DNA of 64,000 bases, taken from contig NW_026262670.1 of the NCBI RefSeq assembly GCF_021869535.1, positions 5,828,001 through 5,892,000 of the forward strand, given 5' to 3'. Source of the DNA: Mytilus californianus. Taxonomy: Eukaryota. The stretch's first letter is position 1; every line of letters begins with the position of its first letter. The translations under genes were made by a program, and so were the position numbers. The notes under the pieces were generated by a model. That model saw only the letters and a list, made by a program, of their open reading frames with translations. It searched no databases and was not told the DNA's origin. Below, in pieces: positions 1-46,303 of this stretch.

Positions 1-184
1 TTGGCATTGCACAGGGTCATGTTGTTTTCAAACTGTTAATGACGTACTTACACTAAATCCATTTGATGTTGGATGTGTACTGATTAATATTTAAGTCTTA
101 AATACATCTTTTTGTCTTAGTTCATTTTGGCTATGAATTAGTTGTCAGTAACTTAGAGTCGTCTCAGAAATGTACGTTGTGTCC

Positions 185-288
185 TTTTTGTAGAGATGAT
201 GGATGGTTAAATTCCTTTCCACGTCCGATCTGTGTTTTTGTTGGTAAAGCCCATTTCAACTGATAAATATAGTTTGTTCTCATGTTGT
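185..288 (+). repeat. Left part of a dispersed repeat that continues at 7720-7850 after nested insertions
   Basis: ...ttcaactgataaatatagtttgttctcatgttgt (left) joined to tgtactgttttacctttgtcccatgttaagtggaggg (7720 on) matches an uninterrupted paralog at about 42240-42410 (ttcaactgatttttatagtttgttcttatgttgtacagtttaatcactgtccaaggttcggggagg). Confidence 0.7.
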
Positions 289-553
289 TGGTTGCACTTT
301 GTAAATACAGCTGTTTTACAAGCCACGCCTCTTTCGGGGAGATATATAATATTCATAGATATGTTAATTTGTTAACATACTGGTTCCCAGATATGATCTC
401 TGTGTTTCATCTCATAGAGACATAACTTGAGAATGTGACAGTATAGAAAAAAATGGTATCGCCTAAAAATTAATTCTTAGGAGGTCCAAAAGTGAAGGTA
501 AGGGTAGTATAGAATTTTAGTATAAGTTTAAACTCTTAGAAGTTCAGGGCATA

Positions 554-1213
554 TGTTGCGGAGACGATTTGAATTGTGCAGTGGAATAAATTGTTCATAT
601 AAAGTTCGACGATTTGGGATTTGGGAGTTCGACGATAATGTTATACCAATAGCATTATTATATCCATAACATATAACTAACTCGAATGTTTGCTAATAAC
701 TACGTTTTAATCCAATATTTACAATATTTAAAATCATTGCGTATTACAATTTTACAACATTGTTTTCGATGTTAACTTATCGCATGATAAAGACGATCTG
801 TTTACGTCTGAACATTAGACATAAAATTTCACACTAATTTAACCTGGTTCCCAAAGATGACCAAAACAAAGTAATTAAATCGCCACAGCTGCATTTGCAG
901 ACGACTATTATTTGAACTCTAACTGACTAGACTGACCTACTGAAGGTGTCATAAAATTTAGGAATCCCGTTAAGATTAACAATTAACTTTCTACACTGTA
1001 ATAAATTCTTTGGAAAATACTGTTATCTTTAACTAATCTTAAGAGACGATAATAAAACTTTATTTCAACATAATTATATTGAAAATTAACGATGAAAAAT
1101 AAACTTGCAAAAATATAAGTGCAATTAATAAAAAACCAATTTCTACTCTATTAAAAATTATAACTAAAACACAATCATACTAATAAAAACAAAAAAATAT
1201 TGTCTTCAATCCA
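554..1213 (-). repeat. 3' LTR of the BEL element
   Basis: Direct repeat of 6871-7531 with about 12 differences (about 98% identity by eye); starts tgttgcgg, ends caatcca. Confidence 0.97.
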
Positions 1214-1226
1214 TTCTCCCCCTCTT
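1214..1226 (-). promoter_or_regulatory. Polypurine tract
   Basis: Minus strand AAGAGGGGGAGAA directly abuts the 3' LTR. Confidence 0.9.
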
Positions 1227-1363
1227 GATTGCTCTAAGCCAATCAAACAAAACAATAATTAAACGATACAAAACTGTCTCTGATCTTAGTTCAAATTATC
1301 AAATCATTATTTCAAGATATTAAACTGACTAGATTAAAATGAAACTATATGTCCACACTTCAA

Positions 1364-2640
1364 TTATTTATCACTGTCATTTTCGGAGGTTTCGATGTCT
1401 AACGGACACAGTTTTGTTATTGGTCTTATTAATACAGTTTGTCCAAGTGAAACTTTTGCAACTCGAACATGTCCATCTTTTCCGGGGAAAACTTCGAGTA
1501 TTCTACCAAGCGGCCAATGTCCTCTCGGAACGTTCGGATTCATAACAAGCACAATATCATCGGTTTTCATGTCCCTTTTCGTTTTAGTCCACTTGTCACG
1601 CTTGTTTAGTCCCGGCAACCATTCTCTAATCCAACGTTTCCAAAAATGTCTAATTAATTCCTGTATTCTTCTCCAGCGTTTTCTCGGATTAAGATCAGTA
1701 TTATCAACAGTTTCTGGAGCGAAATGACCACCTAATTGTCCGTGTAAGAAGTGGTTCGGTGTTAAAGGTGTATCATCTTTCGGATCGGCTGACTGGTACG
1801 TAAGCGGTCTCGAATTGATCAGCGCTTCAGCTCCGGTAAATGCTGTTAAAAGTTCTTTATCGTTAATGTCTGCATTTCCTAATATTGCATAAATAGCCCT
1901 TTTTGCGGATGTTATCATTGTTTCGTGAATACCACCAAAATGCGGTGCTAGCGGTGGATTAAAATGCCACTTAATCCCTTGGTTACTTATTGAATTCTGT
2001 ATTTTATCATTGTCTAAAAGCGCAACTAGTTCTTTCAGTTCTCTATTTGCTCCAACAAAATTAGTTCCAATGTCTGAAATAAATTTCTTTAGGAAGACCT
2101 CTCCTATTCACCATCCGATAAAATGCGTTTAAAAATGAGTCCATATCTAATCCAAATGCTACTTCCAAGTGCACTGCGCGTGACGCTAAACATGTAAATA
2201 GACATAAGTATCTTTTTCTGACGTCGTTTTCCTCTGCCCTGAACTGTTATGAACGGTCCTCCAAAATCAACTGCTGTACGAGCGAAAGCATGTAACGGTG
2301 TTTTGAAACGAATTTCCGGTAACGGAGCCATAACTTGCTCGGCAACTTTAGCTTTCCTCTTACGACACGTATAACACTCATGTTCATATTCTCTTATTTC
2401 TTCTCTCCCTGAAATAATCCAAAAGCGTGACGATAATGCTGAAAATATTTGATTTGTCCAACTAACATGTTTTCCAAGTTCATGATAGCGTTTCACAATA
2501 AGCTTCGTGTTCCAATGTTTTCGTGGTGATATAATCGGATATCGAGCATCGAATGATAGAAAATCGGCGTACTCTAAACGTCCATCACATCTGATTAATC
2601 CATTTTCATCAATTCGCGGTTGTAATCCTAATAATTTGCT
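1364..2640 (-). pseudogene. BEL integrase (HHCC zinc finger, rve core, DUF5641-like tail), frameshifted
   Basis: HELGKH...[76 protein letters not shown] spread over ORFs 2104-2496 and 1364-1918. Confidence 0.93.
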
Positions 2641-3983
2641 AGTTTTCGGTAAATCTTTATTTTTATCAGAGCGTTATATTCGTCTGAAAATGCCTCTCTT
2701 TGTGCATTTTTAATTATTTCCAGTTCGGTATCTGCATATTCGACGGTAGATATACTTCCTATACGACGTTGTTCTTGCTTTAGTCTGCAATTGTCAATAA
2801 ATCTGTACACATACGCATGTACACGAACTAGTCTTACAAAACTTGAATAACGTACGGGATCTAAACGCCAATCTGAATCACTAGTGTGAATACTTTTCAG
2901 TGTAGTACAGTTAGTTAATTTATGGCTTGTTTTCTTTTGACACTTAAGTTCGGTATCACGTACGTTTACTATCTGAATATTAGTTTCCGGCCATTGAGGT
3001 TCTTCTTCTTGTAGAAATTCCGGTCCATTCCACCAAATTAAGTCCGACTGTAATTGTATAATTTTCCTACCTCTAGATACTAAATCTGCTGGGTTAACTT
3101 TTGTTGGCACATGTCGCCATTGTTTAGGGTGCGATGAAGTGTGAATTTCTCCGATTCGATTCGCTACAAACGGCTTGTACTCTCTACTCCTGCCTCTAAT
3201 CCAATAATACAAAACGTTCATACTGTCTGACCAGAGTGTCATGTTATCCTCAGGTACTTCTAATGCGTGTTTAACTGAAAGTGCTAATCTTAATCCCAAA
3301 ACTGCAGCCATCAACTCAAGTCGTGGAATGCTGACTGAAGTTAACGGAGCAACTCTCGATTTCGCTACTATTAATCTCGTAGATATCGTGCCACTCTTAT
3401 ACTCTTGTCTAGCATATATAACTGAACCATAAGCCTCTTGAGAAGCGTCGCTGAATGTGTGAAGACTCGTTGAAACAATGTCATCGTCTAACTGCAAACA
3501 TCTCGGAATTTTAATACAACATAGTTCATCAAGTTCACGGAACCACTCTCTTGATTTGTCAACAAGTATTTCGTCTAACTGGTCGTCCCAGTCTAGTCCT
3601 GCTGTCCAAATGTCTTGTAGTAGTAGTTTTCCTCTTATTGTGTACGGCGCAATAAATCCCAACGGGTCGAATAACGTAGCAACTTTGCTTAGAATGTTTC
3701 GTTTAGTAAATTTGAAATCATCTGCCGGTGGGTTAGCTTTAAACTTGAATATGTCATTGTCTGCCTGCCATATAACTCCTTGAGTTTTCACGGACGGTAA
3801 ATATCCCTCATCGAGGTCGACTTGTGACGCACGATCTTCTTCTGGAATACATTGCAAATCTGACTTTGAATTCGATAGCCGTTTCCGTGCATACATCCCT
3901 GCTTTTTCCCATAACTGTGATAGCTGATTATAAAGTTCGATGCCTTGTTCATCGTTGGTTACAGAGTCCATACTGTCGTCCAT
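2628..3983 (-). pseudogene. BEL RT C-terminal part, connection and Pao-type RNase H
   Basis: ORF starts inside the catalytic (STY)MDD; contains TKRNILSKVATLFDPLGF, HTFSDASQEAYG, SIPRLELMAA, WSDSMNVL, NPADLVSRG. Confidence 0.95.
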
Positions 3984-3994
3984 GTATGTAGATT

Positions 3995-4513
3995 TTAAAA
4001 CTGTTTCGGCGGCTCGCGGATTAAATCTTTCGTCATTTCGGCATGTTTTCTAGAAACAAACTGAGCTTGAAATGGAGACGAATTTACTCCAAAAACAACA
4101 CTATTGAATTCATATTCCTCTTGTACATGTTCAGTTTTCATTGCGCGCAATAAAAATCTGTGAAACGGTCTGTCGTCTGGTGCAATTTTAATTCTCAAAT
4201 ACATTTCGGCTATGTCACAAACAAGTGCAACTGGATTCTTTCTAAAGCGTAATAGTACATCAAATACAATCCTCGTTTTAGTAGTTTCCTTGTCCGGTCT
4301 AATCACCGGAAAATGCGGCAAATACCATTTTCCTGCTACGGTCTCCTCCTTTGCCGACACTTTTCGAACATATCCCTTTTCAATGTATTTCTCTATGATT
4401 TTTGTGTAATCTTTTGCAATACTTGGGTCTTTCTTTAATCTTTTTTCTGTGTTTTCTAATCTATGAAAGCCATGTTGAAATTGTTCGGTAACAATGGTGT
4501 GTCGTCTTTCCAC
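3995..4513 (-). pseudogene. BEL reverse transcriptase N-terminal part
   Basis: WYLPHFPVIRPDKETTKTRIVFD, CDIAEMYLRI, VVFGVNSSPFQA motifs. Confidence 0.93.
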
Positions 4514-5340
4514 AGTATTTTAACTTCGTAGTGTCCGTCCTTAAATTCCAAAGATTGCTCTACAATAGACAATGCTTTTCGCTCATCACTGTTTAGAAAT
4601 ACGTTTTCGCTTGGTGTTTTGACATTTTCAATTTCCCAAAACTTCCAAACAATGTTATCTAAATCATTTCGATTCTCTTGTCCACGAGCAAAATACGTTC
4701 GGTTAAATAGTGTCTGCTCCTGTACGCTATTCGCATCTCCGATACACGTCCAACCTAACGGTGTTAGTCTAGCAATTGGTTCTCCAAGTTTACCACGAAT
4801 AGCTCTATAAGAATAATTTAGATCCGGATAGTCCAGCCCGATCAACATATCAACGGTAGGTCTTTGTCCTAGATTCGGAAATTTAATCCCTACAAGATGC
4901 TCCCATTTCCGAGCGTGTTGTTTCCAATCAACTGGTTGTAAACTTCCGGTTACACGGTTAGTAGTGAATGCGACTATATTGGCGTCTGTCTGACCATTAT
5001 GACTTTGAAGTCTAACCTCGACTGGCATAGTTTCAAATGTTTCGACATTGTCATTTAACACATTAACTGTCACTTTCTGAACTTGTCCTTGAAGTCCCAA
5101 TTCAGCGGCAACATCAGCGTTGATATACGTTTTCGTACTTGCGTCATCCAGTAATGCATTTACGCTTACGGTACGGTTACCATATTTAAATATTACGGGT
5201 ACTGTTCTAAGCGTGACGAAGTTTGATTTTCTGTCTCGGCCGATCATTGTGCGATTCTGACTCTCCCCCATAGTGGCGGCGGCTGTATCTTCCTTCATTT
5301 CAGTAGCATAGTTCTGTTTTGTTTTCGATTCGGTTTTCAC
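4456..5340 (-). pseudogene. BEL aspartic protease region
   Basis: LRTVPV...NALLDDASTKTYI, VDMLIGLDY, PIARLTPLGWTCIG, KFWEIE: typical BEL protease and downstream linker. Confidence 0.9.
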
Positions 5341-9249: not shown

Positions 9250-9655
9250 TACCATGAATGTTTTACCCAAGGAATAGATAATCTGAGCTGGCAAATCCTG
9301 GTCCTCAATCTTTTAATGTCGTACTTTGTTTGGCCTTTTTAAATGTTTGAATTGAGCTCACTTATGAGTCTTTTCATGCGTACCAAATTTTAATCTTGGT
9401 ACCTATGATGAGTGTATTTATAACCACTGAGTCGAAGTCACTGCGAGTTTAGGTTTCTTCTACCCCAGGAATACACTACCTTAGCTGTATTTGAAAAAAA
9501 CTTTTTGGAATCGTGTGTTCCTCAATGCTCTTCAACCTCGTACTTCATTTGGCCGTTTTCATTTTTTTGATTCGAGCGTCACTAATGAGTCTTTTGTAGA
9601 CGAAACGCGCGTTTGGCGTGCAAAATTTTAATCCTGGTATCTTTGATGAGATAAT
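9250..9655 (+). mobile_element. Decayed retrozyme-type repeat (about two partial units) with a mutated hammerhead at 9576-9619
   Basis: gcgtca-ctAatga-gtcttttgtagac-gaaa-cgcgcg-tt-tggcgt: HHR fold with G5 changed to A at 9584; flanks homologous to the 354-bp unit. Confidence 0.8.
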
Positions 9656-14299: not shown

Positions 14300-14516
14300 A
14301 GGTTTTGAAACACAGAAGTGCTGACTTCTTAGTAGGTTACCCTCTGAGAGGAAACCTCTACCAGCAGTGGCATCAGCCCAATGATTGTAAATGAAGTATT
14401 AAAATTTTGTACGCAAGACGCAAGTTTCGTCTACAAAAGATTAATAATTATCACTCGAATCAGAAAAGTAAAAAACACCTAATAAAGTACTAAGTTGAAG
14501 AGCATTGAAGACCAGA
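14300..14516 (-). mobile_element. Strongly decayed copy of the retrozyme-type repeat
   Basis: Reverse complement retains gtcttcaatgctcttcaact, ttttgtagacgaaac and gatgccactgctggt segments of the 354-bp unit. Confidence 0.7.
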
Positions 14517-24304: not shown

Positions 24305-25423
24305 CTATTCCCCCGATTTTGAAATCATGGAACTGGTCGTACGTACAGAACACCTGTAATATGATTTCGATTTTTTACTTTTACATTTAAACAACATCAA
24401 CAATTCTTTTCTGAAATAGGCACCTGTAATACTATAAAGAAAAAAGTGGACAGAATAGTTCATGAAGTATACAGTTTTGGTAAAATATAGAATGTTTTGT
24501 GACTTGCTTAATATTGCTCCTATATCCATATGCCCAGTTCCTGAATTGATGAAATGAGTTAACCATAAAACTGCATAAGGAGTGTTGAAAACAACAAAAC
24601 ATACGGACACCGCTATCAGTATAAGAGTGAATTCTAACCGTATGATACTTTCCTCGGAAATGATACGATTTCGTCGATGATGTTTATTTCTCCTGATTAG
24701 TTTTCGTATGATTAAAGCATTTAAACATGTTATGATGAGGAATGGTATAAATGTAATAGATACACAAAATATACAATCGTAAATAAATGAAACAAGCCGG
24801 TACTCATTTCGTCGCACACACCAAGGCACTTCATTTGGTCCTATGTTTATTTCTTTGTTTAACCATGGACGAAATAACGCTACACATACAGATATAAGAA
24901 TAACAACAGCAATGACTCTACGTGATGAGCTCGTATCGCTTATGTTTCGACGTCGTTTTAACGGATGACACACCCCGATATATCTCTCTACTGTAAAGCA
25001 AACCACTAGCCAAGATGAAAGGAACCTAAAATTATATGTTAAAAACAAAATCACATGGCATGTACCATCTCTCTCTAGAAAAAGTGGTGCAGATGTGCCG
25101 AATGCAGTTGGAAGGCCTCTACGCAGCCATTCTATTAACACATATGATAAAAGTGCCATCAAATCTGCACATGAAATGGCCGCTAAGTATAAACTAGCAG
25201 GCAATCGTCGCATATTTCTTGCCAGAAACACTAATAGAGATAATGTATTTCCAACAACTCCGATAATGAATATAATTGGTGTAATATATGTAAAAAATGT
25301 CTGTCCAGTTGTCCTTACCAATGTTTCTCCTTTGAATGTAAAATTGAAACTGCTGTCTGTACAGTTTGGTAGATTGTTATCAGATCCATTCAAATTACAT
25401 GCAGGAATTGTTGAAAGATTTCC
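24305..25423 (-). CDS. Main coding exon of a class A peptide GPCR (FMRFamide/myosuppressin/sex-peptide-receptor-like group)
   Basis: Seven hydrophobic segments; GN in TM1, LAAISCAD in TM2, FLSSWLVVCFTVERYIGVCHP in TM3, CFVVFNTPY in TM6, NYSVHFFLY...G..FR in TM7; four N-glycosylation sequons in the N-terminus; tandem TAG TAG stops. Strong acceptor (tttttttctttttcag/G) at 25424; the ORF-track start MCYFFFLFQ is intronic. Confidence 0.92.
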   Translation of the reverse strand, partial: GNLSTIPACNLNGSDNNLPNCTDSSFNFTFKGETLVRTTGQTFFTYITPIIFIIGVVGNTLSLLVFLARNMRRLPASLYLAAISCADLMALLSYVLIEWLRRGLPTAFGTSAPLFLERDGTCHVILFLTYNFRFLSSWLVVCFTVERYIGVCHPLKRRRNISDTSSSRRVIAVVILISVCVALFRPWLNKEINIGPNEVPWCVRRNEYRLVSFIYDCIFCVSITFIPFLIITCLNALIIRKLIRRNKHHRRNRIISEESIIRLEFTLILIAVSVCFVVFNTPYAVLWLTHFINSGTGHMDIGAILSKSQNILYFTKTVYFMNYSVHFFLYSITGAYFRKELLMLFKCKSKKSKSYYRCSVRTTSSMISKSGE

Positions 25424-28421
25424 CTGAAAAAGAAAAAAAAAATAACACATATCTTTTATAAATCAAGTAAAGCATTATGTGGATCAACAGATTCATTTCT
25501 CTTCTAACAGGTATTAAGACACCTTCTTTTTTTTATCAAATCACGAACGTCAAAAGAAATATTTTTTTTATAAAGTACATTATCATATTTTGGAGTTTAA
25601 ATGTATTCTAATCAAAAAAGATAATGATGGTAAATGAAAATAACTGTTAATAGATTTAGTTTTACAAAGGGTTTTTCTTGATTTACCTTCATCTGGAACG
25701 CTCAAACCCAAAAATATTCAAAGCCAGGGATAAATAAGTATGTAGAAACATTCGGAGTTTTATGTTTAAAAGCTTTAGTCAAAGATAAATCCACCACATG
25801 TGAGAGTTTTGCGCAAAACAACCTCAGTAAAACGCCTTCAAGTGTTCGGAACTTTTGCCCTTCAAATGTGTTCCAAGTTACAAAATTTTTTTGATCTATT
25901 ATTATTTTATTGTTGTCTTACATTATAACTGTACCATTAGAACTTACAATCTTTTGTATGATAAGTTAAGTATGCTTTACAAAATAAAATGTACTTTATC
26001 AATGAGATAATCACAATTTATATGTAAGAAAAGGACAGACATTAGGCCAATACGATAAGATGCAGTATATCAAAAGGAACACGACAGCAATCATGACTTG
26101 GAGACATGGCAGCATTGTATGTACACACAGCAAAACGTATTGTAACTGTCTTTAGTTCTGAAGTCCATTTAAATCTATACAAAATACACACCTAAAACTG
26201 GGCACGATTTCAAGTGGTCAAGGAAATATCATCCAATTGGAATGCTTTCAGCTTTCGATTACGACTTAATTATTTAACATTGCTCGTAGTAAATGTTGCT
26301 TAACTAAATGATTATTATTGTCAACGTTGATTCATCGTTAATTCACCGTAAACAATATAATGCATTTTAGTATCCAATTTTACATTCAGTTTTGAGTAAA
26401 AACTATACCTTTTTCTTAGTTATAAAGGACATGCGATAACAAATTAAGAAACAATTAAACAGCATGATTTAAGCTCATAAGTTAACAAAATATGGAATAC
26501 ATCAAAGAGTGACTTATAAGTTGTCAGGACACATTCATTTCATCCACTAAAAAATGAGGAACAAAAAAATTGAAAAACAAAGTGTCACACAGAATGCAAA
26601 TTATATTGTAACACATAGAAAATCAAGATAGTATACATTGATATAATTTGAGCATTGCTTTTCAAAAATTAAAAAGAGAAAAAAAATTTCATAATAGCCA
26701 AAAAGGATATTTTTAAGATGATTGTTTGGGCTAGTTGGACACATACGTCAACTACCAATATACAATTTCTTCACAGACCTTACCTAAAAATACAGGAATT
26801 ATCATAAAAACCAACCAAAGATATAAAGCTTTTGATTTGAAACACCATACGATTGGTTTTTTTTTTGTCGAAATAAGACTCATCAATTGCACTCGACTCA
26901 AAACATTTGAATAACAAATCAAATGCAAAGTTGACGAAGCTTAAAAACCTTTATTGATACCGAAAAATTATACCAAAAACGGCTTCCACATTCTCATTGT
27001 TCTCTGCCTTTAGAACCTAAGCGTCGCCAAAATTCAACATTTAATAAACAGTTATGAATAGATTTAACTGACCTTTTAATAACGGATATAGTTTAATTGT
27101 AAAAATCTTTTAAAAATAAGACGCTATATTTTATAAATGAGGTATAACATAGCACGGCTATTTTTTGAAGGCATGTCATTTGAAAAACATATTCATGAAT
27201 TACATCAAGAGCATTTCTTTATTGACATGCTTGAACAAAACTGCCAACTTAAAATTTTCTTCACCGAAGTATAGCAAAGCATCAGCGTTGCAAAAAATGT
27301 TCCTCTTCTTTAGGTCAAAGTGAACGAAAACCCACAGAACCCTGCAATACAATGACATTAATTATGCATCCATAAGACCACAATATTTTGCCAGATGTAT
27401 AAACAGCTGTACGTTTGTATTGAGAGTCATATCACTGTATTCATTTAACGATACATTCTTCATTTACTATGCATTGTAAAGATAGAAGGCATATGTATAG
27501 TTACGAATTTACAAACGACTAGCGATTTATAGTTTAAGATCTAGAGGTCAATGCGCAGCTTGGAAAATCAATTAGATCAATTTATACTCTGAGTGAATAA
27601 CACTTGATATAGGAAATGTCTTGTCTGCTACCGTAATTCTGAACGTCAATAAAATGTTAGCTGAATAAGGAAATTATGTGATGAAGTTATATTCTGTAAT
27701 TCGATTAATTAAACAAATGTAGTCTAAGTAATTTCTTGGTTACTTGGTATAAACTCTTATATGTATCTAAAATAGATACACGACTTGCAAAAATATAAAA
27801 CAAATGTCTAATTATCTATAGCCAAATGAACTATACTGAACTTTCTTTTACAAGGTGAAACAACAAATAGAATATATAATTAAAGACAAAAATGAAACGG
27901 ACGCTGATGATGGAATATATGTTATGCACTGCCATTCAGAAATTTAAATACACGCTTAACATTGTGAATACTGAAAACAAACACATTGTGGAACGCGATA
28001 TATACACATGTATAAAGTATCACACCACCTTGTACTAATGACTAGAAAAAATGTTACCCTGGAACTAATTAGTCATTTAAAAAACAAATATGGACAATGT
28101 TTATCGTTGTTAATATCATACATGTGTCCCATCGTTTCTACCTACCGTAAAAATCCTAACTAGAACATGCATTATTGTACTCACAACTAAGGGAAACCTC
28201 ACCATTGTTACCATATTTGTTATTGATTTAACTTACACAGTTTTACAAATTCTGTTACGAAATGAAATAGCTTTAATTTCGTTACAGAAATTGCAACTCT
28301 TAAATCAGGAATGATGGCAAATTCTTTATGAGAAATACTTTATGTCACAAAGATAGATTGCCAGGCGGATGGAACATCATCACACAATTAGCAGTCGTAT
28401 TGTACGAACGCATTAACTCAC

Positions 28422-28589: not shown

Positions 28590-29160
28590 AATCGTCCGAA
28601 AAGACGTTGGATATCGATACGTGCGTAATGAAGAAACGCGCACTGTCTTACGATAACTGCTTTCTTCTGTTGCATGTTACAGTTCATGCATCGAGTCAAA
28701 CTGATACTGCATATGCAGAAAAGAACATTCTAAAAAGAGTTCCTGTCGGCGGAGGGTATTTAATGGTATGAAGGTTTGTGTCATATGACTGCCATCTTGA
28801 TATTTTAACTGTAGTAGGCAACTTTAACAGTCAAAGGTACCAGAGGGATTCCTGCACTCAACTGTATTGCCTCATTTTGACAACCATCCTCTGCACACAA
28901 GACCAATATTTTTGAATCTACACGCCAGATCTCACACTTGAAAGCCAGAACGTCTATTCCATGGCCTGCCATTAGCCCAGTTTGAACCTTATTGAGCATA
29001 TCTGGGACAAATTTGGTCGTCGAGTAATTCAGTTTAGAATATCTTTGAGTTATCACAAGCTTTGCATCAGGAATGACACTGACTTCCACATCGCTGAGTT
29101 CAACATTTGATCCAAGGAATGAGAAGACGGTGATTCGTGCCAACAATGGTTACACTGACA
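28590..29160 (+). pseudogene. Degenerate Tc1/mariner (DD34E-type) transposase fragment
   Basis: VPVGGGYLMV, HFDNHPLHTRPIF, WPA.SP.LNLIEHIWDKFGRR, LIQGMRRR..IRANNGYT motifs across frames; no TIRs recognised. Confidence 0.85.
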
Positions 29161-30766
29161 GTCTTTTGTTCATGCGTTTAAGCAAATAAGACACAAACCA
29201 AGAGCACTTTTGCTAAGACACTTTGTCATCATGCTCACGTTTCAATGAAAACAAGTGTTTCACCTAAAAAGTAGAAAAAAGAGACTCGTTCCCTGTCGAC
29301 GCTCTCGGTCTTGCTCATTTGGAGTTCAGTTTTTGTAAATAAATTTATCATAGCAATACAAGCTACGTAAGCTACCTTTTTGTCTCTTCTTCTAAATCAA
29401 ATTTACGAAATACTGTTCTTCATTACAACTTTTCGGCTGGTAGATTTTAACCCTTCCCTGAAGGCATCAAAAACATATTAAATTTATGCATGATCAACAG
29501 TACTACAAAAAAAAAAAAATACCGGCTAGGACGTTGCTAGGACGTTGCCCTTTTTGTGAATTTATTATAGAGTCTGGTACTTTGGTAAATAATGTTTGCC
29601 TTTATCTTGATCTAAAAATGCAAATATTATTGTCTGATCTAAACATTAACCATTGGTGTCCTATACTTGACTGTAAAAGTTAGACTGAGTAAATTTCATT
29701 GGCGGTTGATTAATACCAAGCAGATGACGGTGTTGATCATTTTGGATTTTATCCAATTCTTTTTGTTTTGCAGTTTTACCCTAATTTCTATCGTTTAAAT
29801 GGGTTAATGAGATTACAACATCGATAAACTCCTGTTTCCCTGTAATTTATTTCGATTTATTTCTCACTACAAACAACACGAACAAGTAACATTAGTAAAA
29901 AAAAAAATTTTTTTGACTTGAATTACCATACACAATTATTGCTCTATTTACATGGAACTTTTTTTCAATGAAATTAATAACATCACTTCATTTCACACCA
30001 TAGCATATAACATATTCTGTATGCAAATACTTATAAAGTTAGGCACCATTATTGAAATCCAGATCAAAGATAGATATAATAAAACGTATACTAAGTATTC
30101 AACTAAGAAATCTCGAGAAATCACAACTTGAATTAAATGAATAGAATCATTTCAGGAAATTAGATGTGTGTAGGTGAAATGAAATAACAGGTACATTGTT
30201 TTCTAAGATTAGTTTTAGACTTCTGAGTTTTAATCGATTAATTTTAGTTTATTTCCACTCTCTTTTAGTTGATGATATTTCAATAAAAAAATTGTTCATT
30301 ATTGAAATCGTTTTGATCCATGCAGAGGTTTATTAAAAACTGCAGCTGTAATTCTAAAAAAATAATATGACAGCTGTTTATTGGTATTCTGTATCAGTGC
30401 TTACGTAGAATTTTATTAAATGTCAATGGCCATGGCAAGGAAGATATAGATGAATAACAAAAATATAGATTTGTCTGGTGTTAAACCATCAAAATACATG
30501 TTTCACATGCCACAGCCTTTTATCTTATTAATTCGAGGGATTGAAAACAGAGAAATCAAACGATTATAAAACCCGACAAAACAACTTGAAGCAGAATGTG
30601 GTTAAATAACTCAACATCTTTCTCAATGTCACTGGATTTAACGAATGGATTTTCTTATCCCAGGAATAAATAACCTTAGCCGTATTTGGTACAACTTTTT
30701 GGAATTTTGGGTCCTCAATGCTCTTCAACTTTGTACTTGTTTGGCTTTATAAATATTTTGATCTGA

Positions 30767-30810
30767 GCGTCACTGATGAGTCTTATGTAGACGAAACGCG
30801 CATATGGCGT
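30767..30810 (+). ncRNA. Minimal type I hammerhead ribozyme, stem III mismatch (G16.2 to A)
   Basis: gcgtca CTGATGA gtct tatgt agac GAAA cgcgca TA tggcgt; predicted site AUA at 30804. Confidence 0.75.
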
Positions 30811-31120
30811 TTTAAATTATAATCCTGGTACCTTTGATAACTATTTACACCACTGGGTCGATGCCACTCCTGGTGGACGTTTTTTCCCCGAGGGTATCAC
30901 CAGCCCAGTAGTCAGCACTTCGGTGTTGACAGGAATATCAATTATATGGTTATTTTTATAAATTTCCTGTTACAAAACTTTTAATTTTTCGAAAAACTAA
31001 GAATTTTCACATCCCAGGAATAGATAACCTTAGCCGTATTTGGCACAACTTTTTTGAATTTTGGGTCCTCAGTGCTCTTCAACTTTGTACTTGTTTGGCT
31101 TTATAAATATTTTGATCTGA

Positions 31121-31164
31121 GCGTCACTGATGAGTCTTATGTAGACGAAACGCGCGTATGTCGT
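31121..31164 (+). ncRNA. Minimal type I hammerhead ribozyme, intact core
   Basis: gcgtca CTGATGA gtct tatgt agac GAAA cgcgcg TA tgtcgt; palindromic acgcgcgt; GUA site at 31158; one U-U mismatch in stem I. Confidence 0.88.
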
Positions 31165-31474
31165 ATTAAATTATAATCCTGGTACCTTTGATAACTATTT
31201 ACACCACTGGGTCGATGCCACTGCTTGTGGACGTTTCGTCCCCGAGGGTATCACCAGCCCAGTAGTCAGCACTTCGGTGTTGACAGGAATATCAATTATA
31301 TGGTCATTTTTATAAATTTCCTGTTACAAAACTTTTAATTTTTCGAAAAACTAAGGATTTTCTTATCCCAGGAATAGATACCTAAGCCGTATTTGGCACA
31401 TCTTTTTTGGAATTTTGGGTCCTCAATGCTCTTCAACTTTGTACTTGTTTGGCTTTATAAATATTTTGATCTGA

Positions 31475-31518
31475 GCGTCACTGATGAGTCTTATGTAGAC
31501 GAAACGCGCGTATGTCGT
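31475..31518 (+). ncRNA. Minimal type I hammerhead ribozyme, intact core
   Basis: Identical to the HHR at 31121; GUA site at 31512. Confidence 0.88.
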
Positions 31519-34500
31519 ATTAAATTATAATCCTGGTACCTTTGATAACTATTAACCGGTGTAATGGTATGTTTTACTTTAGTGATAGATCATTAATAAA
31601 AAGAAATACAAATAAACATAAAAGATTGACATGTTTAAATTTTTTGTTTATCAATATATTGCGAACAAATAAAATCTAATCTATAACGATTTCACCTTTT
31701 AATCATAAGAAAAAAAACCCATGTAAGATGACCCAAATAAACGGTGGTCATTTTATTTACCTAGGAAACCTACCAAACAATCCTATTCTAAAATAGTTAT
31801 ACCGTAAGATTTGTTGAAAATGAGCAAATTAATAAAAATGTTTATAAACATGGAGACCAAATGCCTTTTTTATAATCAAGTTGCAACAAAATGACATGAT
31901 TTTGTATGTAACTGAAATTGATTATATCAACAGTACGTTTTGATTTTAAAAAACGGAGTAAATAATCGTCGTTGAATACATTGCGTTGTTCGGTTTTCAA
32001 GATATTTATCATATTTGTGTAGCGATTCGACAAAGCAGGGGTGCTGTTTCTTGTGGTTTCGGCTGTCGGCGTCGGCGACATGAACAATGTATTAGTTTGT
32101 GATCATGTCTTATGCTAGTTGAAAAGAAACCAATGATGGTAAGTTAATGGTTTTGCAATTGGTATGCAGTTTTAAAAACATTGGCATTGACCATGGAGGT
32201 TATTTTGGCCTGCACCTTCAGTCATGCTTCATCAACTCTGAATGTTTTGAAAAGTGTTGCCATATCAATTTCAGCACTTGCATTATACTTTCTTAATAAG
32301 AAAAAGGCGAGACATAGCTCAGGGTCAACAGTTTATATTATTTAAACATGTCCTAAATTAGTGGAGTAAATGTATAAATTCACAATAGACAAAAAAGAAG
32401 CAGAGTCGTTTTTCATCGAGCTTACGTGCAAAACACCTTTGCTAAAAATGCATATTTCATAAAAATAAGGAAATGTGGTATGATTCATATGAGACAATTT
32501 TCCATCAAAGTTCAAATAAAATGGATGTAAGCAATTGTAGGCAACCGTACGTCCTTCAACAATGAGAAAACCCCATACCTTATAGTCGGCTATAAAAGGC
32601 CCCGACCACAAAAATAAAAAACAATTCATTTGAGAAAACTAACGGCCAAATTTATATCAAAACAATTTTTTTACTTAAACCAGATGGGGATGATGTATAA
32701 TCTTTAGTGGAACAGTCACCAATCGAAGGAAAGTCTTAAAAGATAAACAAGTGTGTGCCAAAAAAGTTACAATTATGAACTGAGACTCGTTTGATGTATG
32801 AATTAAAAATATCAACAATCATATAAAGGAAAAAATAAAACCTACGTCACAACTGATAGCGGTTGCCTGATATATAAACTTGGTTATGTTAAACTATAAT
32901 TGTTTCGGACTCATCCTTTCCTCTGCTTTTATTTCACTCAGGTGCCTGACTAGAGTTTAGATAACCGTACATTACAAATTGATACTATGCAACCGTTTAA
33001 CTGTATTCAGTTGCTGTTAAAAAACAGCAAGTAAAGGTACAAGGTACACATGTTTTTCTTTTATATCTCTGTTTATTATTTACCCTGCCTCTTCTCATTA
33101 TACAATAGATGATATTTTGAGTATTCACCCCTAGCATTGGTTTTTTGACATGTACATTAGCATGCAAGTTTCTTTGACAAAGGTATGTTCTATAATTCAA
33201 CTACCTTAGATATGATAAGCAGCTATCCTAATTATAGCAATAATTTATCTAAGGAACTTATCAAACCGATGACATCTATAGTGACTATAATCAAATCAAA
33301 TTAACGATGTCATTAATTTGATTGATGTGAAAATAATAACCTAATGAAGCAATACACCGAATTAATGTATTTCACATCAGGACTTTTTTGTATGTAACTG
33401 CTTAAATTTAGTGGGCGAAACATAATCAATACTGAGTTAAATAAGCTGAATCGTTTTATAGTGTTACTGAAATGCAGATAAGTTACGGACAGAACCAGTT
33501 CCCAACATCACACAATTAAAGCTCGGTGTGCAAAAAATATGGTCAGTTATGTAAATGGACACTGACATACTACAAACGCTTTGATTTGAGTTTTTTGTTT
33601 GGTATGGTGTTGACCGTTTTTCTTGGACTAATAATTTTTCGTTGTTTCTATGGTATTTTTTGTCTTCTGTAAGTTAAAGACATTTGTCACGCATATTCAA
33701 AAGGAACGTAAATTCAGAGAAATCTGTAGCATTTCCCATGTTATAGTAAATTCCCTAAACTATACATTTTGAATCACTTAACGTGAAAAAAAAAAAATAT
33801 TTTACGATTATACAAGAAAAGAGTAAAATATCAAAAATAACGAAATCCAAGGAAAATTCAAAACAGAAAGTTCCTGATCGGATGGGAAATCAAAAGCCCA
33901 AACACATCAAACGAATGGAAAACAACTGTCAAATGCCTTTACTTGGTACAACATTTCCTTATGTAGAAAATGGTGGATGAAACTTGGTTTTATAGCTAGC
34001 TAACCTCTCACTGGTATTACAGTCGCATAAAATTCCATTATATTGACAACAATTTGTGAACAAACAAACAGACATAATAAGTAAACATGTCAAAAATTGG
34101 GGTACAGCTGTCAACATTGTGTTATATTCTTAATCACTATAAAACAAACAACTATGTCAACAAAAATAAACAAAATGGCAATTATACAAAGTACTTAGGT
34201 GGGTTGTATAAATACCGAGCAACGTAAAAAGGATTTTACCAAAGATTGACTAAACAGTGAAGGTTAATAATATTCAAAGAGAAATAAAACAACACTATAA
34301 CACGTTATAAATAACATTTACATATAGAGAAAACTCGATATTTTGTTGTTGTTATAATTCAAATTAAATTTTTAAAAGTAGACCTATCACCTTGTTTGCT
34401 GTCAATTAACTGGTTTTAAAGAATGCAGCGATACCTCTCTACGTAGGATCCTATTCCTTTACAACTTTTATCGAGGTATTTGTTGTAATCTGATAAACGG

Positions 34501-41900: not shown

Positions 41901-42498
41901 AAGTTAATACAGGCGTAAATGTACTTGCAAGAAAGAAGGCTACGAAAACAAACAAAACAGTTTCTTAGAAATACTTCCGGGCTTTATTATTGAATTTTCT
42001 TTTGAAAAATGGATTAATGCAAAATAGGTATTACCTTATACTCATCAAGCATTTGGGATTGATAGCAAACTAATGGTAGTCTCTTTTACGGTATTCACAT
42101 CTTATTCGACTAGAAAGGCCTTAATTACCATGTTTTATTGCGAAAAGACTATCGCGTATTGCTGACGAATGTTAAATATTGATCACTACTTTCTGTTTGC
42201 TTTTTTTTTATTGGGGAACTGCTTTTTTAGTTGTTGTTACGTATGAGGGATGGATAAATACACTGCCACGTTCGGTCTGTGTTTTTGATTGTAGGTTTTT
42301 GAATCGATCTGAAGAGTTTAGCCTTTTTCAACTGATTTTTATAGTTTGTTCTTATGTTGTACAGTTTAATCACTGTCCAAGGTTCGGGGAGGATTGAACA
42401 CTCACAAACATAATTATTTTTTTATTTAGTGGTGCATCCAGTTGCACCACTTTATCAAATAAACTCATCATAGATACCAGGATTGAAATTTTGTATTT

Positions 42499-42543
42499 GC
42501 GCCAGACGCGCGTTTCGTCTACAAAAAGACTCATCAGTGACGC
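42499..42543 (-). ncRNA. Fully canonical minimal type I hammerhead ribozyme in a solo retrozyme fragment (about 42457-42580)
   Basis: Minus strand gcgtca CTGATGA gtct ttttgt agac GAAA cgcgcg TC tggcgc; GUC site at 42505; all stems paired. Confidence 0.88.
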
Positions 42544-45500
42544 TCGAATAAAAAAAAGGTTAAAAAGGCCAAATAAAGATTAAAAAGGCCAAAAAAAGAT
42601 ATTAAACCGACAACTTAAAGAGAGTCTTTACTATACTTTTCTTGTATACGAACTACGAAACATCATTTCGCAATTCGTACTAAGAGTAATTATTCTTCAT
42701 TTTAAACAAAATATGGCCTTGAATCTTAACTGTATATAATAAATATGAAAAAAACCGCAATTTATTTATAAAAATTCTTCTTTGTCAAACACCTAAATAG
42801 GAGGTACAATCAGTCTCATGAAATAGGCTCCAAGGCAGCACATTTTAAAGATTCTGCATTCTGTTTTTGCATTGTTTGGACATAAAACACAAATAAATTT
42901 AAAAATAAGGAGATGTGGTATGATCTCTCGTATAGAGATCAAATGACACAGATATTAACAACTAAACATTCGTGTTGTCAGATTAAAATATCTTTAACAC
43001 CCTTGTCCAGAGATACATTCTGCTAAATTTACCATATCGATAATTTAACATTCGTACTTATTGCGTAATAAGATATGTGTCCTGGTAAGAGTAACAGCAG
43101 GTGGTATATATACTTAAGTGTTTATCGTCTATTATACATCTGAAGGTGACATTTAGCTTAAGGAAAATTTAGTGATCAGAGAGAAGATATATAACATTCT
43201 GTCGAAAATTATTTGAAAGGTAAACATTATTAAGGTCATCCGCAAAACAAATGAAAATAATATATATATATACAATGTACTTTTTTTATGTTATGCAATT
43301 CAATTTTGATACTTCAAGTTTTATAAATCTGCTTAATGTCTTACAATTCAAATTAACGTTAGGCAAACTATAAGTAGTGTGTCAGTATTTCAATTAGTAA
43401 TACCTTCCTAATGAATAACATTGACCGATTTGAGCTGGGATAATACTAATTTAGTCTGAATTTTAGATGGTCTGTAATAATACTTAAAGTAGAATTTTTG
43501 AGTTTTGGCTTTTTTGCACTTTTGTATAAAAACAAATGTATTTTTTTCTAAATTGCTTAAAGGGATAGTAACTACGATTTTGACAAAATTATGACCACGT
43601 TTTGAAGCTGCTCAAATTAAAGATATGTACTTAAAATAATCAATAAGATGGCTGGAATGTTTACATAAACTACAGAAGTGTTAATAATTCATAATTAATA
43701 TCGTGTTGCGTGCCTATTCATCTCATTAATTATGCATCGGGTTTACTTCCCGAATTTTGCCGACACAGCGAGTGAAATGACCCAGATATAAATATCACAA
43801 AAGCTTGCATCTTATTCGAACCAAAGGTTCTCAAACAATGGCGATTATATACACTTGTTTTTACATTTGTATGACAAAACAATGCCGATAATGTATACAC
43901 GTGTTTGTGAATTGGGGCCATCACGAAGGATACACCGGAAGAAAAATATCAAATTGTAAGAAGTTGATTTTTAATTTCTGCTATGTTGAGAGATCACTGC
44001 TCGTAAATTTGTAAACATATTTTTTTACAATAATTACTTGAACACGTCGCAATTTGTTTGCATGTGATCTGGAATAGTTTAGAAATGTAAACATTTCGCA
44101 AACCGTAGTATTGTCGGCTACTTCTGTGTGACAGGTTTTTTAAGTGATTCTAATGACCAATTTCATCGCCGCTATTTATTTTCAATTTACAATAATTTGT
44201 CTGCACCTCTTTCCTGATCCTTTTTCTCGCAGAAACTGTAAATTCATGTTCCATTCCCGCGATAACATTCCTCTGTTCGACATTTTCCCTTCGAGGACCA
44301 ACGTGCGATTGCGCAATGAGAACTGCCGAGTTAAGGTTAACATAGGTCATATGAATAAGGGTTGGCTTAACATCGAATTTTTATCTGTAGACAACAATTA
44401 AATTCAGGTGTAAAAAGTTAAAAAGCTTCAAAATGCTAAATGGAAAGTAATCAGTGATGGTGTTATTTATACTTAATAAACTTTTTGTACAAAATCCGGC
44501 ATATAGATTAAAAATAATTTTAATGAAATTCGTAGTTACTATCCGTTTAATAATTTCGAAACAATTCGAACTTAACGATGCATTTTCTAAAGAGTGTCAA
44601 CAACAGGTAAATGCCAAGCTTATTGGTAATTCGTGTACTGGTAAAATTTACAAGATAAGGGAATGGCGTGTCTGTGGATTGGAGATTAGGAAGTTGAATC
44701 TGAAATGATATCCTCAGGCTTAATCTATATTTAATACACGTGATTTGCATTACCGTTATATCCGAGACAGTTTTTGCGAAAATGTACAACAAAAAGTCTC
44801 GAAGGACACGTTGTTAAAGTTCGTTCAAATATGTTTTATGCGAAAAAAAAATGCTATCAATGTAAACATTCATAAAATTGTCAATTCTGTCCCAAATTTG
44901 TCAATTGAAACGGAAAAAGACGTATAAATATCTGAATATTTATACTTAAGCAAGTGTAAAATTCATGTGTTACACGAAACAATGCTATACTGAACAGAAA
45001 CTTAACCATGTACGACACAATAGAGACAAAAATGTCAACAGTTTCTAATAGATCTACCTTTGTTTAAAGAAAGGATGACACCATATGGGAAAATGCAAAA
45101 AAAATATGTCATCTCGTGTATTTGAAAGCGAAATTTAATTTAAGTTAAGTTATTAAGTATTATATAGATAAACCTTCCTTGCACGGGAATCGAACCGTTA
45201 CTTCCTTTGGTTGCATTGATATCTGTATTGTAAGCTACCGAGGTGAACATCAGTTAGAAGTTAAAACATTTCAACTATACATGGAAAATGATTAAAATAT
45301 ATGAAATAATTCAGCAAAATCTCAATAAACAAGGGGCTTCAGCACTTACAGGTGTGTATAGCTTACAGCTTAAGGGAATGAGAAAAAGTACCTGTGTTTT
45401 ATAGGTCACAAGTCGGCTATCAATAATTATGCATACTTTTTGGTATTTCGTTTCTGTAACTTTTTTTATGGACTGACTCATTTATATATATATGAGTATT

Positions 45501-46049: not shown

Positions 46050-46260
46050 AAATAGTTGTCAAAGGTACCAGGATTATAATTTAATACGCCAGATGCGCGT
46101 TTCGTCTACATAAGACTCATCAGTGACGCTCAGATCAAAATAGTTATAAAGCCAAACAAGTACAAAGTTGAAGAGCATTGAGGAACCAAAATTCCAAAAA
46201 GTTGTGAAAAATACGGCTAAGGTAATCTATTCTTTGGATAAGAACATCCTTAGTTTTTCT
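46050..46260 (-). mobile_element. Half-unit copy of the 354-bp retrozyme, HHR at 46086-46129 with G16.2 to A
   Basis: Reverse complement matches the array unit from ctaaggat.ttcttatcc to gacaactattt; stem III acgcgcat, AUC site at 46092. Confidence 0.85.
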
Positions 46261-46303
46261 TAAAAAGTGTTCCTCATCATCTACAATTTTACAAACTTTA
46301 CAC

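What the first reader, a model, noticed from the sequence alone, without database searches (positions are those of the whole stretch)
30647..31553. 354-bp tandem array in which every unit carries a hammerhead ribozyme: a retrozyme/circRNA locus
Seen: an exact 354-bp period with the HHR core CUGAUGA-stem II-GAAA-palindromic stem III (acgcgcgt) in each unit and predicted cleavage at 30804 (AUA, mismatched), 31158 (GUA) and 31512 (GUA). Established: tandem minimal type I HHR repeats of a few hundred bp are non-LTR retrozymes; their palindromic stem III lets two ribozymes dimerise, and they yield monomeric circular RNAs (reported in mussels, among other animals). Inference: plus-strand transcription would release a 354-nt monomer (31159-31512) able to circularise. 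The array sits about 2 kb upstream of the candidate GPCR first exon, in antisense orientation.
Basis: partly seen in the sequence, partly recalled or inferred. Interest (0 to 1): 0.85.

Follow-up and report, generated by a model that had tools for sequence, protein, structure and literature searches.

The report
Mussel hammerhead retrozyme array, worn copy
This is a real 2.6-unit tandem array of a 354-base non-coding jumping element with a self-cutting hammerhead RNA motif in each unit; it belongs to the mussel "retrozyme" group published in 2020, so it is ordinary, and this copy is a slightly damaged minority variant.

Summary
Window 30640-31553 (+) is a 354-bp tandem array of 2.6 units at 96% identity. 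Each unit has a complete type I hammerhead core, and the predicted cuts fall after 30804, 31158 and 31512. The element is one of at least 3,000 dispersed copies in this 1.65-Gb genome. It is homologous to the published Mytilus galloprovincialis retrozyme clone Mg353, which self-cleaves in vitro and forms abundant circular RNA (PMC7229834). The kind is therefore already known.

RNA-seq reads cover the repeat at depths of hundreds to thousands and give zero depth on the flank. Many reads join unit end to unit start, and none pile up at the cut site. About 98% of reads carry GUC at the cut site. This locus has GUA, like 2% of genomic copies, plus a helix I or helix III mismatch, so it is not shown to be a source of the RNA.

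One added result: in two sister families, insertions end at a fixed point 40-50 nt past the cut site, while their 5' ends are random. They have no poly(A) and at most very short target duplications. That is a target-primed, Penelope-like insertion signature. The helper element was not identified. The scan has already noted other retrozyme families (about 538 bp) elsewhere in this genome.

The parts
30640..31553 (+). Whole insertion: a 5'-truncated 2.6-unit retrozyme array (unit positions 191-354, then 1-354, 1-354 and 1-41, counting from the cleavage site)
   Evidence: TRF, BLAST chaining; RNA depth starts exactly in the 30640-30665 bin
30764..30810 (+). Hammerhead 1: core intact, C.A mismatch in helix III (GCGCAUA), cleavage triplet AUA, predicted cut after 30804
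31118..31164 (+). Hammerhead 2: core intact, GUA cut site after 31158, U.U mismatch at helix I position 1.3/2.3
   Evidence: Rfam RF00163 25.3 bits at 31121-31164; pairing listed
31472..31518 (+). Hammerhead 3: same sequence as hammerhead 2, predicted cut after 31512
   Evidence: Rfam RF00163 25.3 bits at 31475-31518
31159..31512 (+).
   Evidence: fold not unusually stable (z -0.32)
31204..31263 (+). Predicted hairpin domain (unit positions 46-105); its arms are 100% conserved between the two sister families; it lies immediately 3' of the point where all DNA copies end (a second copy is at 30850-30909)
   Evidence: MFE structure; between-family conservation profile; covariation not testable
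31513..31553 (+). 41-nt tail past the last cleavage site, ending in ...GATAACTATT: the family's canonical 3' terminus
   Evidence: 3' ends at unit positions 39-45 in 28 of 29 independent arrays, p 6e-47

Best explanation
The stretch is one old, 5'-truncated insertion of a non-autonomous, non-coding retroelement of the metazoan non-LTR retrozyme class, from the group described in Mytilus (units of 350-390 bp carrying type I hammerheads). How the family works: tandem units are transcribed on the strand that carries the ribozyme. Hammerheads cut each unit after GUC, probably as pairs, because their helix III is only a palindrome that forms an 8-bp duplex between two ribozymes. The 354-nt monomers are then closed into circles by a host RNA ligase. 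A reverse transcriptase from another element copies this RNA into new sites. The copying starts at a fixed place about 41-45 nt downstream of the cut site, just before a conserved hairpin. It runs round the template one or more times and stops at random, which yields arrays with a constant 3' end and variable 5' ends. Shown here: the array, the ribozyme motifs, dispersal, the insertion geometry, and abundant strand-biased family RNA that crosses both the unit junction and the cut site. Taken from the literature: self-cleavage and circles for the sister clone. Inferred: the ligase step, the fixed start of reverse transcription, and a Penelope-like helper. This particular copy carries a minority cut-site letter (GUA) and stem mismatches, and it most likely contributes little or nothing to the RNA pool.
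For: Array and motifs. Dispersal: 155 scored matches on many contigs and 3,028 first-look candidates; 3,043 exact 32-nt GUC hammerheads and 61 GUA ones genome-wide. Homology with the published clone Mg353: the hammerhead differs at 2 of about 40 positions, and long blocks are shared by eye. The Mg353-like sister family in this genome is 82% identical to the window unit over positions 38-353. An Mg353-specific 34-mer occurs 4 times at 2 mismatches and 0 times in the control. Published self-cleavage (kobs about 0.1 per min) and circRNA northerns: PMC7229834. RNA: depth 0 across 30250-30639, then 125-3,500 over the unit in four runs; a 3-10-fold strand bias in three stranded runs; 151-691 reads per run join unit end to unit start; no pile-up of molecule ends at 30804|30805. 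Dimer: the minimum-energy fold of two majority ribozymes is the double hammerhead, ddG -11.5 kcal/mol. Insertion geometry: family 1 has 3' ends at positions 39-45 in 28 of 29 arrays and 5' ends that fit a uniform distribution (KS p 0.86); family 2 has 3' ends at 40-50 in 24 of 26; there is no poly(A); flank matches average 5.0 against 3.9 nt (permutation p 2e-4). Neutral decay of copies: the hammerhead is no better conserved than the rest of the unit (0.976 against 0.973), with scattered core-killing mutations. No coding capacity or helper gene nearby.
Against: Rfam's curated threshold for Hammerhead_1 is not reached (25.3 against 34 bits). The 354-nt monomer does not fold more stably than shuffled sequence (z -0.32), whereas published retrozyme circles are described as highly self-paired. 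Short reads cannot tell circles from uncleaved multimers. The strand assignment assumes a dUTP-type library, which I could not calibrate. No Penelope-like element sharing this hammerhead or terminus was found among 30 GIY-YIG loci.
Confidence: 0.88

Rival explanations
1. This locus is itself an active circRNA gene: plus-strand transcription of 30760-31560 is cut at 31158 and 31512 and releases a 354-nt circle.
For: All three catalytic cores are intact, and GUA is an allowed cleavage triplet. The A variant at the cut site is present in 2-5% of RNA reads, so some GUA copies are transcribed.
Against: Read depth on the adjacent flank is zero, and only 1-2% of laid reads match this copy at 99% or better. 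The RNA share of A equals the genomic share of GUA copies (61 of 3,104), so nothing singles out this locus among about 60. The U.U mismatch in helix I brings its hammerhead fold to -1.1 kcal/mol against -4.3 for the majority, and its dimer minimum-energy fold loses helices I and II.
Confidence: 0.2
2. The helper is a LINE-type element or another reverse transcriptase, not a Penelope-like element; alternatively, the template is a linear RNA with a defined 3' end at +45 rather than a circle.
For: A fixed 3' end with random 5' truncation is the general signature of target-primed reverse transcription and is not specific to Penelope-like elements. No such element with this hammerhead or terminus was found. 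A circle has no 3' end, so a fixed terminus is explained most simply by a linear template.
Against: There is no poly(A) or simple-repeat tail. Partial tandems with a 30-40-bp tail and a hammerhead near the 3' end are described features of Penelope-like elements (PMC8557442). In Xenopus, retrozymes are sister to the terminal repeats (pLTRs) of Penelope-like elements (preprint 10.64898/2026.07.22.740005). Arrays of up to 17 or more units are easier to obtain from a circular template. Hammerhead-cleaved linear RNA would end at position 354, not at +45.
Confidence: 0.25
3. It is an ordinary satellite that spread by unequal crossing-over or segmental duplication, and the hammerhead is incidental.
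For: The organisation is tandem. Units within an array are slightly more alike than units between arrays (96.8% against 95.4%), which allows some local homogenisation.
Against: There are thousands of short arrays on nearly all large contigs with unrelated flanks, a common 3' end and random 5' ends. The hammerhead and a hairpin are the blocks kept at 100% between sister families. Family RNA is abundant.
Confidence: 0.03
4. It is the terminal repeat (pLTR) of an autonomous Penelope-like element inserted here.
For: Penelope-like elements carry minimal type I hammerheads in tandem terminal repeats, and this genome has over 1,400 GIY-YIG candidates.
Against: There is no ORF of 140 aa or more between 13663 and 24305 or between 25450 and 48733, and no RT or GIY-YIG domain next to the array. 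The repeat family is only 354 bp long at all sampled loci.
Confidence: 0.02

Closest known systems
Mytilus galloprovincialis non-LTR retrozymes (clone Mg353; hammerhead families A and B), Cervera and de la Pena 2020, PMC7229834
   Same: Unit size (354 against 353; published range 350-390 bp). Nearly the same hammerhead: same helix II, same ACGCGCGU helix III, same helix I 5' strand. Shared internal blocks. Thousands of copies (3,104 exact hammerheads here against about 4,600 motifs published). Low GC. Abundant RNA.
   Different: The window family has loop 2 UUAUGUA instead of UUUUGUA and is about 82% identical to the Mg353-like family of this genome. This locus has GUA instead of GUC, plus stem mismatches. 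Whether the window family equals the published hammerhead family A or B could not be checked, because that figure is not held as text.
Newt satellite 2 and axolotl retrozymes (dimeric type I hammerheads)
   Same: Tandem units of about 330 bp, a weak helix III, and cleavage expected through paired ribozymes.
   Different: No sequence relation and a different phylum. In the mussel, monomeric cleavage of the sister clone was observed, although it was slow (PMC7229834).
Penelope-like elements (terminal repeats, or pLTRs, with minimal type I hammerheads)
   Same: Partial tandem insertions, 5' truncation, a hammerhead close to the 3' end, a short tail beyond the repeat, and variable or absent target duplications (PMC8557442).
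   Different: No reverse transcriptase or GIY-YIG ORF. The unit is only 354 bp. No sequence match to the element copies sampled here.
The ~538-bp retrozyme family of the same genome
   Same: Same class and same genome. The notes also report Penelope-type insertion scars.
   Different: Different unit length and a different hammerhead (CUGAAGA core, seen in L035 and L060). That family is reported to land in (TA)n, whereas the 354-bp families do not (4 of 102 flanks).
Plant LTR retrozymes
   Same: Non-coding, bounded by hammerheads, with circular RNA intermediates.
   Different: Those have type III hammerheads, 350-bp LTRs, a primer-binding site and polypurine tract, 4-bp target duplications, high GC and Gypsy helpers. 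None of these is present here.

Membership tests
Metazoan non-LTR retrozymes (Cervera and de la Pena 2020) | Type I hammerhead with a complete catalytic core in each repeat unit | tested here: met
   CUGAUGA, GAAA, the A15.1-U16.1 pair and a non-G base at the cut site are present in all three units
Metazoan non-LTR retrozymes (Cervera and de la Pena 2020) | Short head-to-tail repeats of 150-450 bp, from dimers to multimers | tested here: met
   Period 354, 2.6 copies; other loci have 0.5 to 17 or more units
Metazoan non-LTR retrozymes (Cervera and de la Pena 2020) | Low GC (below 45-50%) and no LTR or coding capacity | tested here: met
   GC 0.34-0.39; no ORF of 90 aa or more in the array; no tRNA-like element. 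A primer-binding site and polypurine tract were not searched for explicitly.
Metazoan non-LTR retrozymes (Cervera and de la Pena 2020) | Dispersed multicopy family with insertion-like boundaries | tested here: met
Metazoan non-LTR retrozymes (Cervera and de la Pena 2020) | Expressed as monomeric linear and circular RNA | tested here: inconclusive
   Family RNA is abundant, crosses the unit junction and the cut site, and shows no ends at the cut site. Short reads cannot prove circularity. Circles are shown by northern blot for the sister family (PMC7229834).
Metazoan non-LTR retrozymes (Cervera and de la Pena 2020) | Self-cleavage of the transcript | not testable with these tools
   Published only for clone Mg353. 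This locus's variants (GUA, U.U, C.A) are untested.
Rfam RF00163 Hammerhead_1 | Covariance-model score at or above the curated gathering score (34 bits) | tested here: not met
   25.3 bits, local E 0.0016. The shortfall comes from the loop-less helix III and the mismatched helix I, not from the core.
Autonomous Penelope-like element | ORF with a reverse transcriptase and a GIY-YIG endonuclease | tested here: not met
   No such ORF within several kb
Plant LTR retrozymes | Type III hammerheads in 350-bp LTRs, with a primer-binding site, polypurine tract and 4-bp target duplications | tested here: not met
   Type I topology, simple tandem units, and only short irregular flank matches

The most novel reading that the evidence does not exclude
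In these mussel retrozymes, reverse transcription starts at one defined internal position of the (circular) RNA, 41-45 nt downstream of the ribozyme cut and directly 5' of a hairpin whose arms are invariant between sister families. The hairpin would then be the recognition element for the helper reverse transcriptase, and array length would simply record how many laps were made before the enzyme fell off. This would give the first concrete, testable cis-element for the mobilisation of invertebrate retrozymes. The 2020 review said that no conserved motif pointing to the helper was visible.
Probability: 0.3. Interest if true: 0.5.

Novelty: already known. Interest (0 to 1): 0.27.

Why it matters
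For the scan, this marks a striking-looking ribozyme array as a copy of a published element, not a discovery. For specialists, two by-products may be useful. First, two sister families share an insertion geometry: a constant 3' end just past the ribozyme and next to a conserved hairpin, random 5' truncation, no tail, and no (TA)n targeting. This narrows down how and where the helper enzyme starts copying. Second, the RNA share of a rare cut-site variant equals its genomic share, which hints that many copies, not a few masters, feed the RNA pool.

Tried and rejected
1. Rfam at gathering threshold over the whole window found nothing. Only the permissive scan shows the hammerheads.

2. Unusual stability of the 354-nt monomer was not found (z -0.32 for the plus strand, -1.0 for the minus strand).

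3. Long target-site duplications were not found. There is only a small excess of 5-8-nt flank matches.

4. Search for the helper. Thirty GIY-YIG loci were examined. Retrozyme-like pieces near the endonuclease domain in L056 and L031 proved coincidental, because sister copies lack them. The CUGAAGA hammerhead in L035 and L060 belongs to a tandem of about 539 bp, which is another retrozyme family, and not to the element's own tail. Rfam found no hammerhead in 20 such loci.

5. Covariation in the conserved hairpin could not be tested. The 52 distinct copies are too alike, and RNAalifold gave a weak and different structure.

6. No tRNA-like or SINE-like origin was found.

It was compared by eye and with one 34-nt pattern.

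9. The strandedness of the RNA libraries could not be calibrated on a known gene.
Full report
THE OBSERVATION

Tandem Repeats Finder reports one array at 30649-31553 with period 354, 2.6 copies, 96% matches and no net indels. BLAST with one unit moves the 5' edge to 30640. Aligning the three units shows that all hammerhead elements are invariant: the core CTGATGA, helix II (GTC/GAC with a 7-nt loop), GAAA and the palindrome ACGCGCGT. The one exception is a G-to-A change in unit 1. The 25-nt core pattern occurs five times in the window against 0.00 expected.

Rfam finds nothing at its curated thresholds. With permissive filters on 1.2 kb, Hammerhead_1 scores 25.3 bits (cut-off 34; E 0.0016) on units 2 and 3, and unit 1 aligns best to Hammerhead_3 at 27.4 bits. 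The motif is therefore real but minimal. Helix III has no loop of its own, and helix I carries mismatches.

WHAT IT BELONGS TO

The 354-nt unit matches 155 scored places, from 3,028 first-look candidates, on most large contigs of the 1.65-Gb assembly. Identity is 93-97%, and arrays range from half a unit to at least 17 units. An exact 32-nt hammerhead, from core to cut site, occurs 3,043 times with GUC and 61 times with GUA.

The literature search led to Cervera and de la Pena 2020 (PMC7229834). That paper describes about 5,000 type I hammerheads in 350-390-bp repeats of Mytilus galloprovincialis. It also reports in vitro self-cleavage of a cloned genomic copy and abundant circular RNA in gonad, mantle and other tissues.

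The supplement prints the clone Mg353. By eye, its hammerhead differs from the window's at two of about 40 positions (one loop 2 letter and the cut-site letter), and long internal blocks are shared. Loose read ends pointed to a second expressed family. I fetched it with a 23-nt pattern (32 exact hits, 0 in the control). Its 362-nt unit is 82% identical to the window unit over positions 38-353. A 34-nt stretch specific to Mg353 is found four times at two mismatches. So the window element is a sister of the published clone within the same group.

THE RIBOZYME IN THIS COPY

Among 40 full-length genomic units, the majority form ends ...GCGCGUC|UGGCGU, which gives a G.U pair at helix I position 1.3. 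This locus is the only sampled array with GUA. Units 2 and 3 also have U.U at 1.3/2.3, and unit 1 has C.A in helix III.

The monomeric hammerhead fold is never the minimum-energy structure: -4.3 kcal/mol for the majority form, -4.9 for unit 1 and -1.1 for units 2 and 3, against minimum energies near -10 to -12. For two majority molecules, the minimum-energy dimer is exactly the double hammerhead, with an 8-bp intermolecular ACGCGCGU helix III (ddG -11.5 kcal/mol). For the window's units 2 and 3, the dimer keeps that duplex but loses helices I and II.

Within the family, the hammerhead is no better conserved than the rest of the unit (0.976 against 0.973), and core-killing changes are scattered among copies. 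That is what neutral decay of inserted copies looks like.

EXPRESSION

Four raw RNA-seq runs carrying the species label of the best DNA holder were laid on 30250-31010, which covers the 5' flank plus exactly one unit. I chose that stretch to avoid an internal repeat.

- **Depth.** It is zero in all 15 flank bins and 125-3,500 over the unit, starting in the 30640-30665 bin.
- **Strand.** Three stranded libraries show a 3-10-fold bias. With the usual dUTP protocol this means the ribozyme-bearing strand dominates. I could not calibrate the protocol.
- **Junction reads.** Between 151 and 691 reads per run join 31000 back to 30647, the unit-to-unit junction.
- **Molecule ends.** The tool lists no place where many molecules begin or end, so linear monomers ending at the cut site are a minority. 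This fits circles religated at that site, as published, but uncleaved multimers would look the same.
- **Which copies are expressed.** About 85% of laid reads are only 90-95% identical to this copy, and 1-2% are 99% or more identical. At 30804, 93-98% of reads carry C, and at 30802, 92-97% carry G. The 2-5% share of A equals the 2.0% genomic share of GUA copies.

The family is therefore highly expressed, but nothing shows that this locus is.

INSERTION GEOMETRY (the added result)

In 29 independent arrays of the window's family, the 3' end lies at unit positions 39-45 in 28 cases (binomial p 6e-47). The terminal sequence is always ...GATAACTATT, with up to four further matching letters. The 5' ends fit a uniform distribution over the unit (KS p 0.86). 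There is no poly(A).

The sister family replicates this. Its 3' ends lie at positions 40-50 in 24 of 26 loci (p 1e-33), at the homologous ...TTTATTT(AC). Its 5' ends are scattered, and most of its insertions are shorter than one unit. Two further fragments in the window itself, 42457-42577 (-) and 46050-46266 (-), follow the same rule.

Flank matches across the insertion are slightly longer than in mismatched controls (5.0 against 3.9 nt; permutation p 2e-4), so target duplications are very short or replaced by microhomology. There is no (TA)n preference (4 of 102 flanks) and no clear target motif beyond AT-richness.

A fixed 3' end, random 5' truncation and partial tandems are the signature of target-primed reverse transcription. 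With a hammerhead near the 3' end and a tail of about 40 nt, they match the published description of Penelope-like insertions (PMC8557442). A 2026 preprint shows that Xenopus retrozymes are sisters of the terminal repeats (pLTRs) of Penelope-like elements, and it notes that invertebrates were not examined.

Immediately 3' of the terminus lies a predicted hairpin at unit positions 46-105. Its arms, together with the hammerhead and a block at 211-225, are the only segments 100% identical between the two families. I infer that it may be the element the helper enzyme recognises. Covariation could not be tested because the copies are too similar.

THE HELPER

The genome has at least 1,480 GIY-YIG candidates, with intact ORFs of 755-911 aa. 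Among the 30 fetched loci, none shares the retrozyme's hammerhead or terminus. Two apparent associations were coincidental, and the CUGAAGA hammerhead in L035 and L060 belongs to a tandem of about 539 bp, which is another retrozyme family. The helper remains unidentified.

SURROUNDINGS

No ORF of 140 aa or more lies within 5 kb of the array. A rhodopsin-type GPCR ORF at 24305-25450 (-) is 5.2 kb away on the opposite strand. The 113-aa ORF at 28805-29146 (-), which is nearer, has no family match. The window also holds BEL/Pao retrotransposon remnants at 1364-5340 (-).

EARLIER NOTES OF THIS SCAN

Earlier notes report several other retrozyme families in the same genome, of about 538 bp and about 750 bp, with Penelope-type insertion scars, and (TA)n targeting for the 538-bp family. 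They agree with the class assignment. I tested the (TA)n claim on the 354-bp families, and it does not apply to them. None of the notes returned by three word searches and one place search covers the 354-bp Mg353-type family.

VERDICT

This copy is a worn minority variant with no evidence of its own activity. Novelty: already known. Interest is low to moderate, and it rests mainly on the insertion-geometry result.

Noticed in passing
window 46050-46266 (-): Another insertion of the same family: unit positions 181-351 plus 4-42, with an intact hammerhead core (46099-46123), 5'-truncated and with the canonical 3' end.
   Followed up: partly
window 42457-42577 (-): Short fragment of the Mg353-like sister family (unit positions 292-362 plus 22-45), again ending at the canonical terminus.
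   Followed up: partly
window 9397-9612 (+) and 14309-14514 (-): Two older, diverged retrozyme remnants (75-80% identity). The first has a core mutation (CTAATGA). That makes five retrozyme-derived insertions in 64 kb, far denser than 3,000-5,000 copies per 1.65 Gb would predict, so fragments must be much more numerous than intact hammerheads.
   Followed up: partly
window 30804 in RNA runs X21-X24 against the genome-wide pattern counts: The share of the rare cut-site letter A in RNA (about 2-5%) equals its share among genomic hammerheads (61 of 3,104, or 2.0%). This suggests that very many copies, not a few master loci, feed the RNA pool.
   Followed up: partly
L060:2090-2837 and L035 (reverse strand) about 2726-3147: A tandem of about 539 bp carrying a different minimal hammerhead (CUGAAGA core, helix II GACA/UGUC, palindrome UCCGGA). 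Its helix I strands (ACAUCA/UGGUGU) look like a covarying version of the 354-bp family's (GCGUCA/UGGCGU). It is probably the 538-bp family noted earlier in this scan.
   Followed up: partly
G000:C110:55838761-55862602 (loci L036, L048-L051): A head-to-tail array of a Penelope-like element with a 3,927-bp period and intact 755-aa ORFs in at least six successive copies, plus one inverted copy. It may be young and active.
   Followed up: no
window 24305-25450 (-): Intronless 381-aa rhodopsin-family GPCR ORF (7tm_1, E 1e-20; also Srw-like).
   Followed up: partly
window 1364-5340 (-): Remnants of a BEL/Pao LTR retrotransposon (Peptidase_A17, E 6e-53; aspartyl protease).
   Followed up: no
loci L009, L014 and L024 (first array); L003 (second and third arrays); L084-L087: Several retrozyme insertions share identical flanks. 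They therefore sit inside other repeats or segmental duplications and were copied along with them. I counted each such group once where I detected it.
   Followed up: partly
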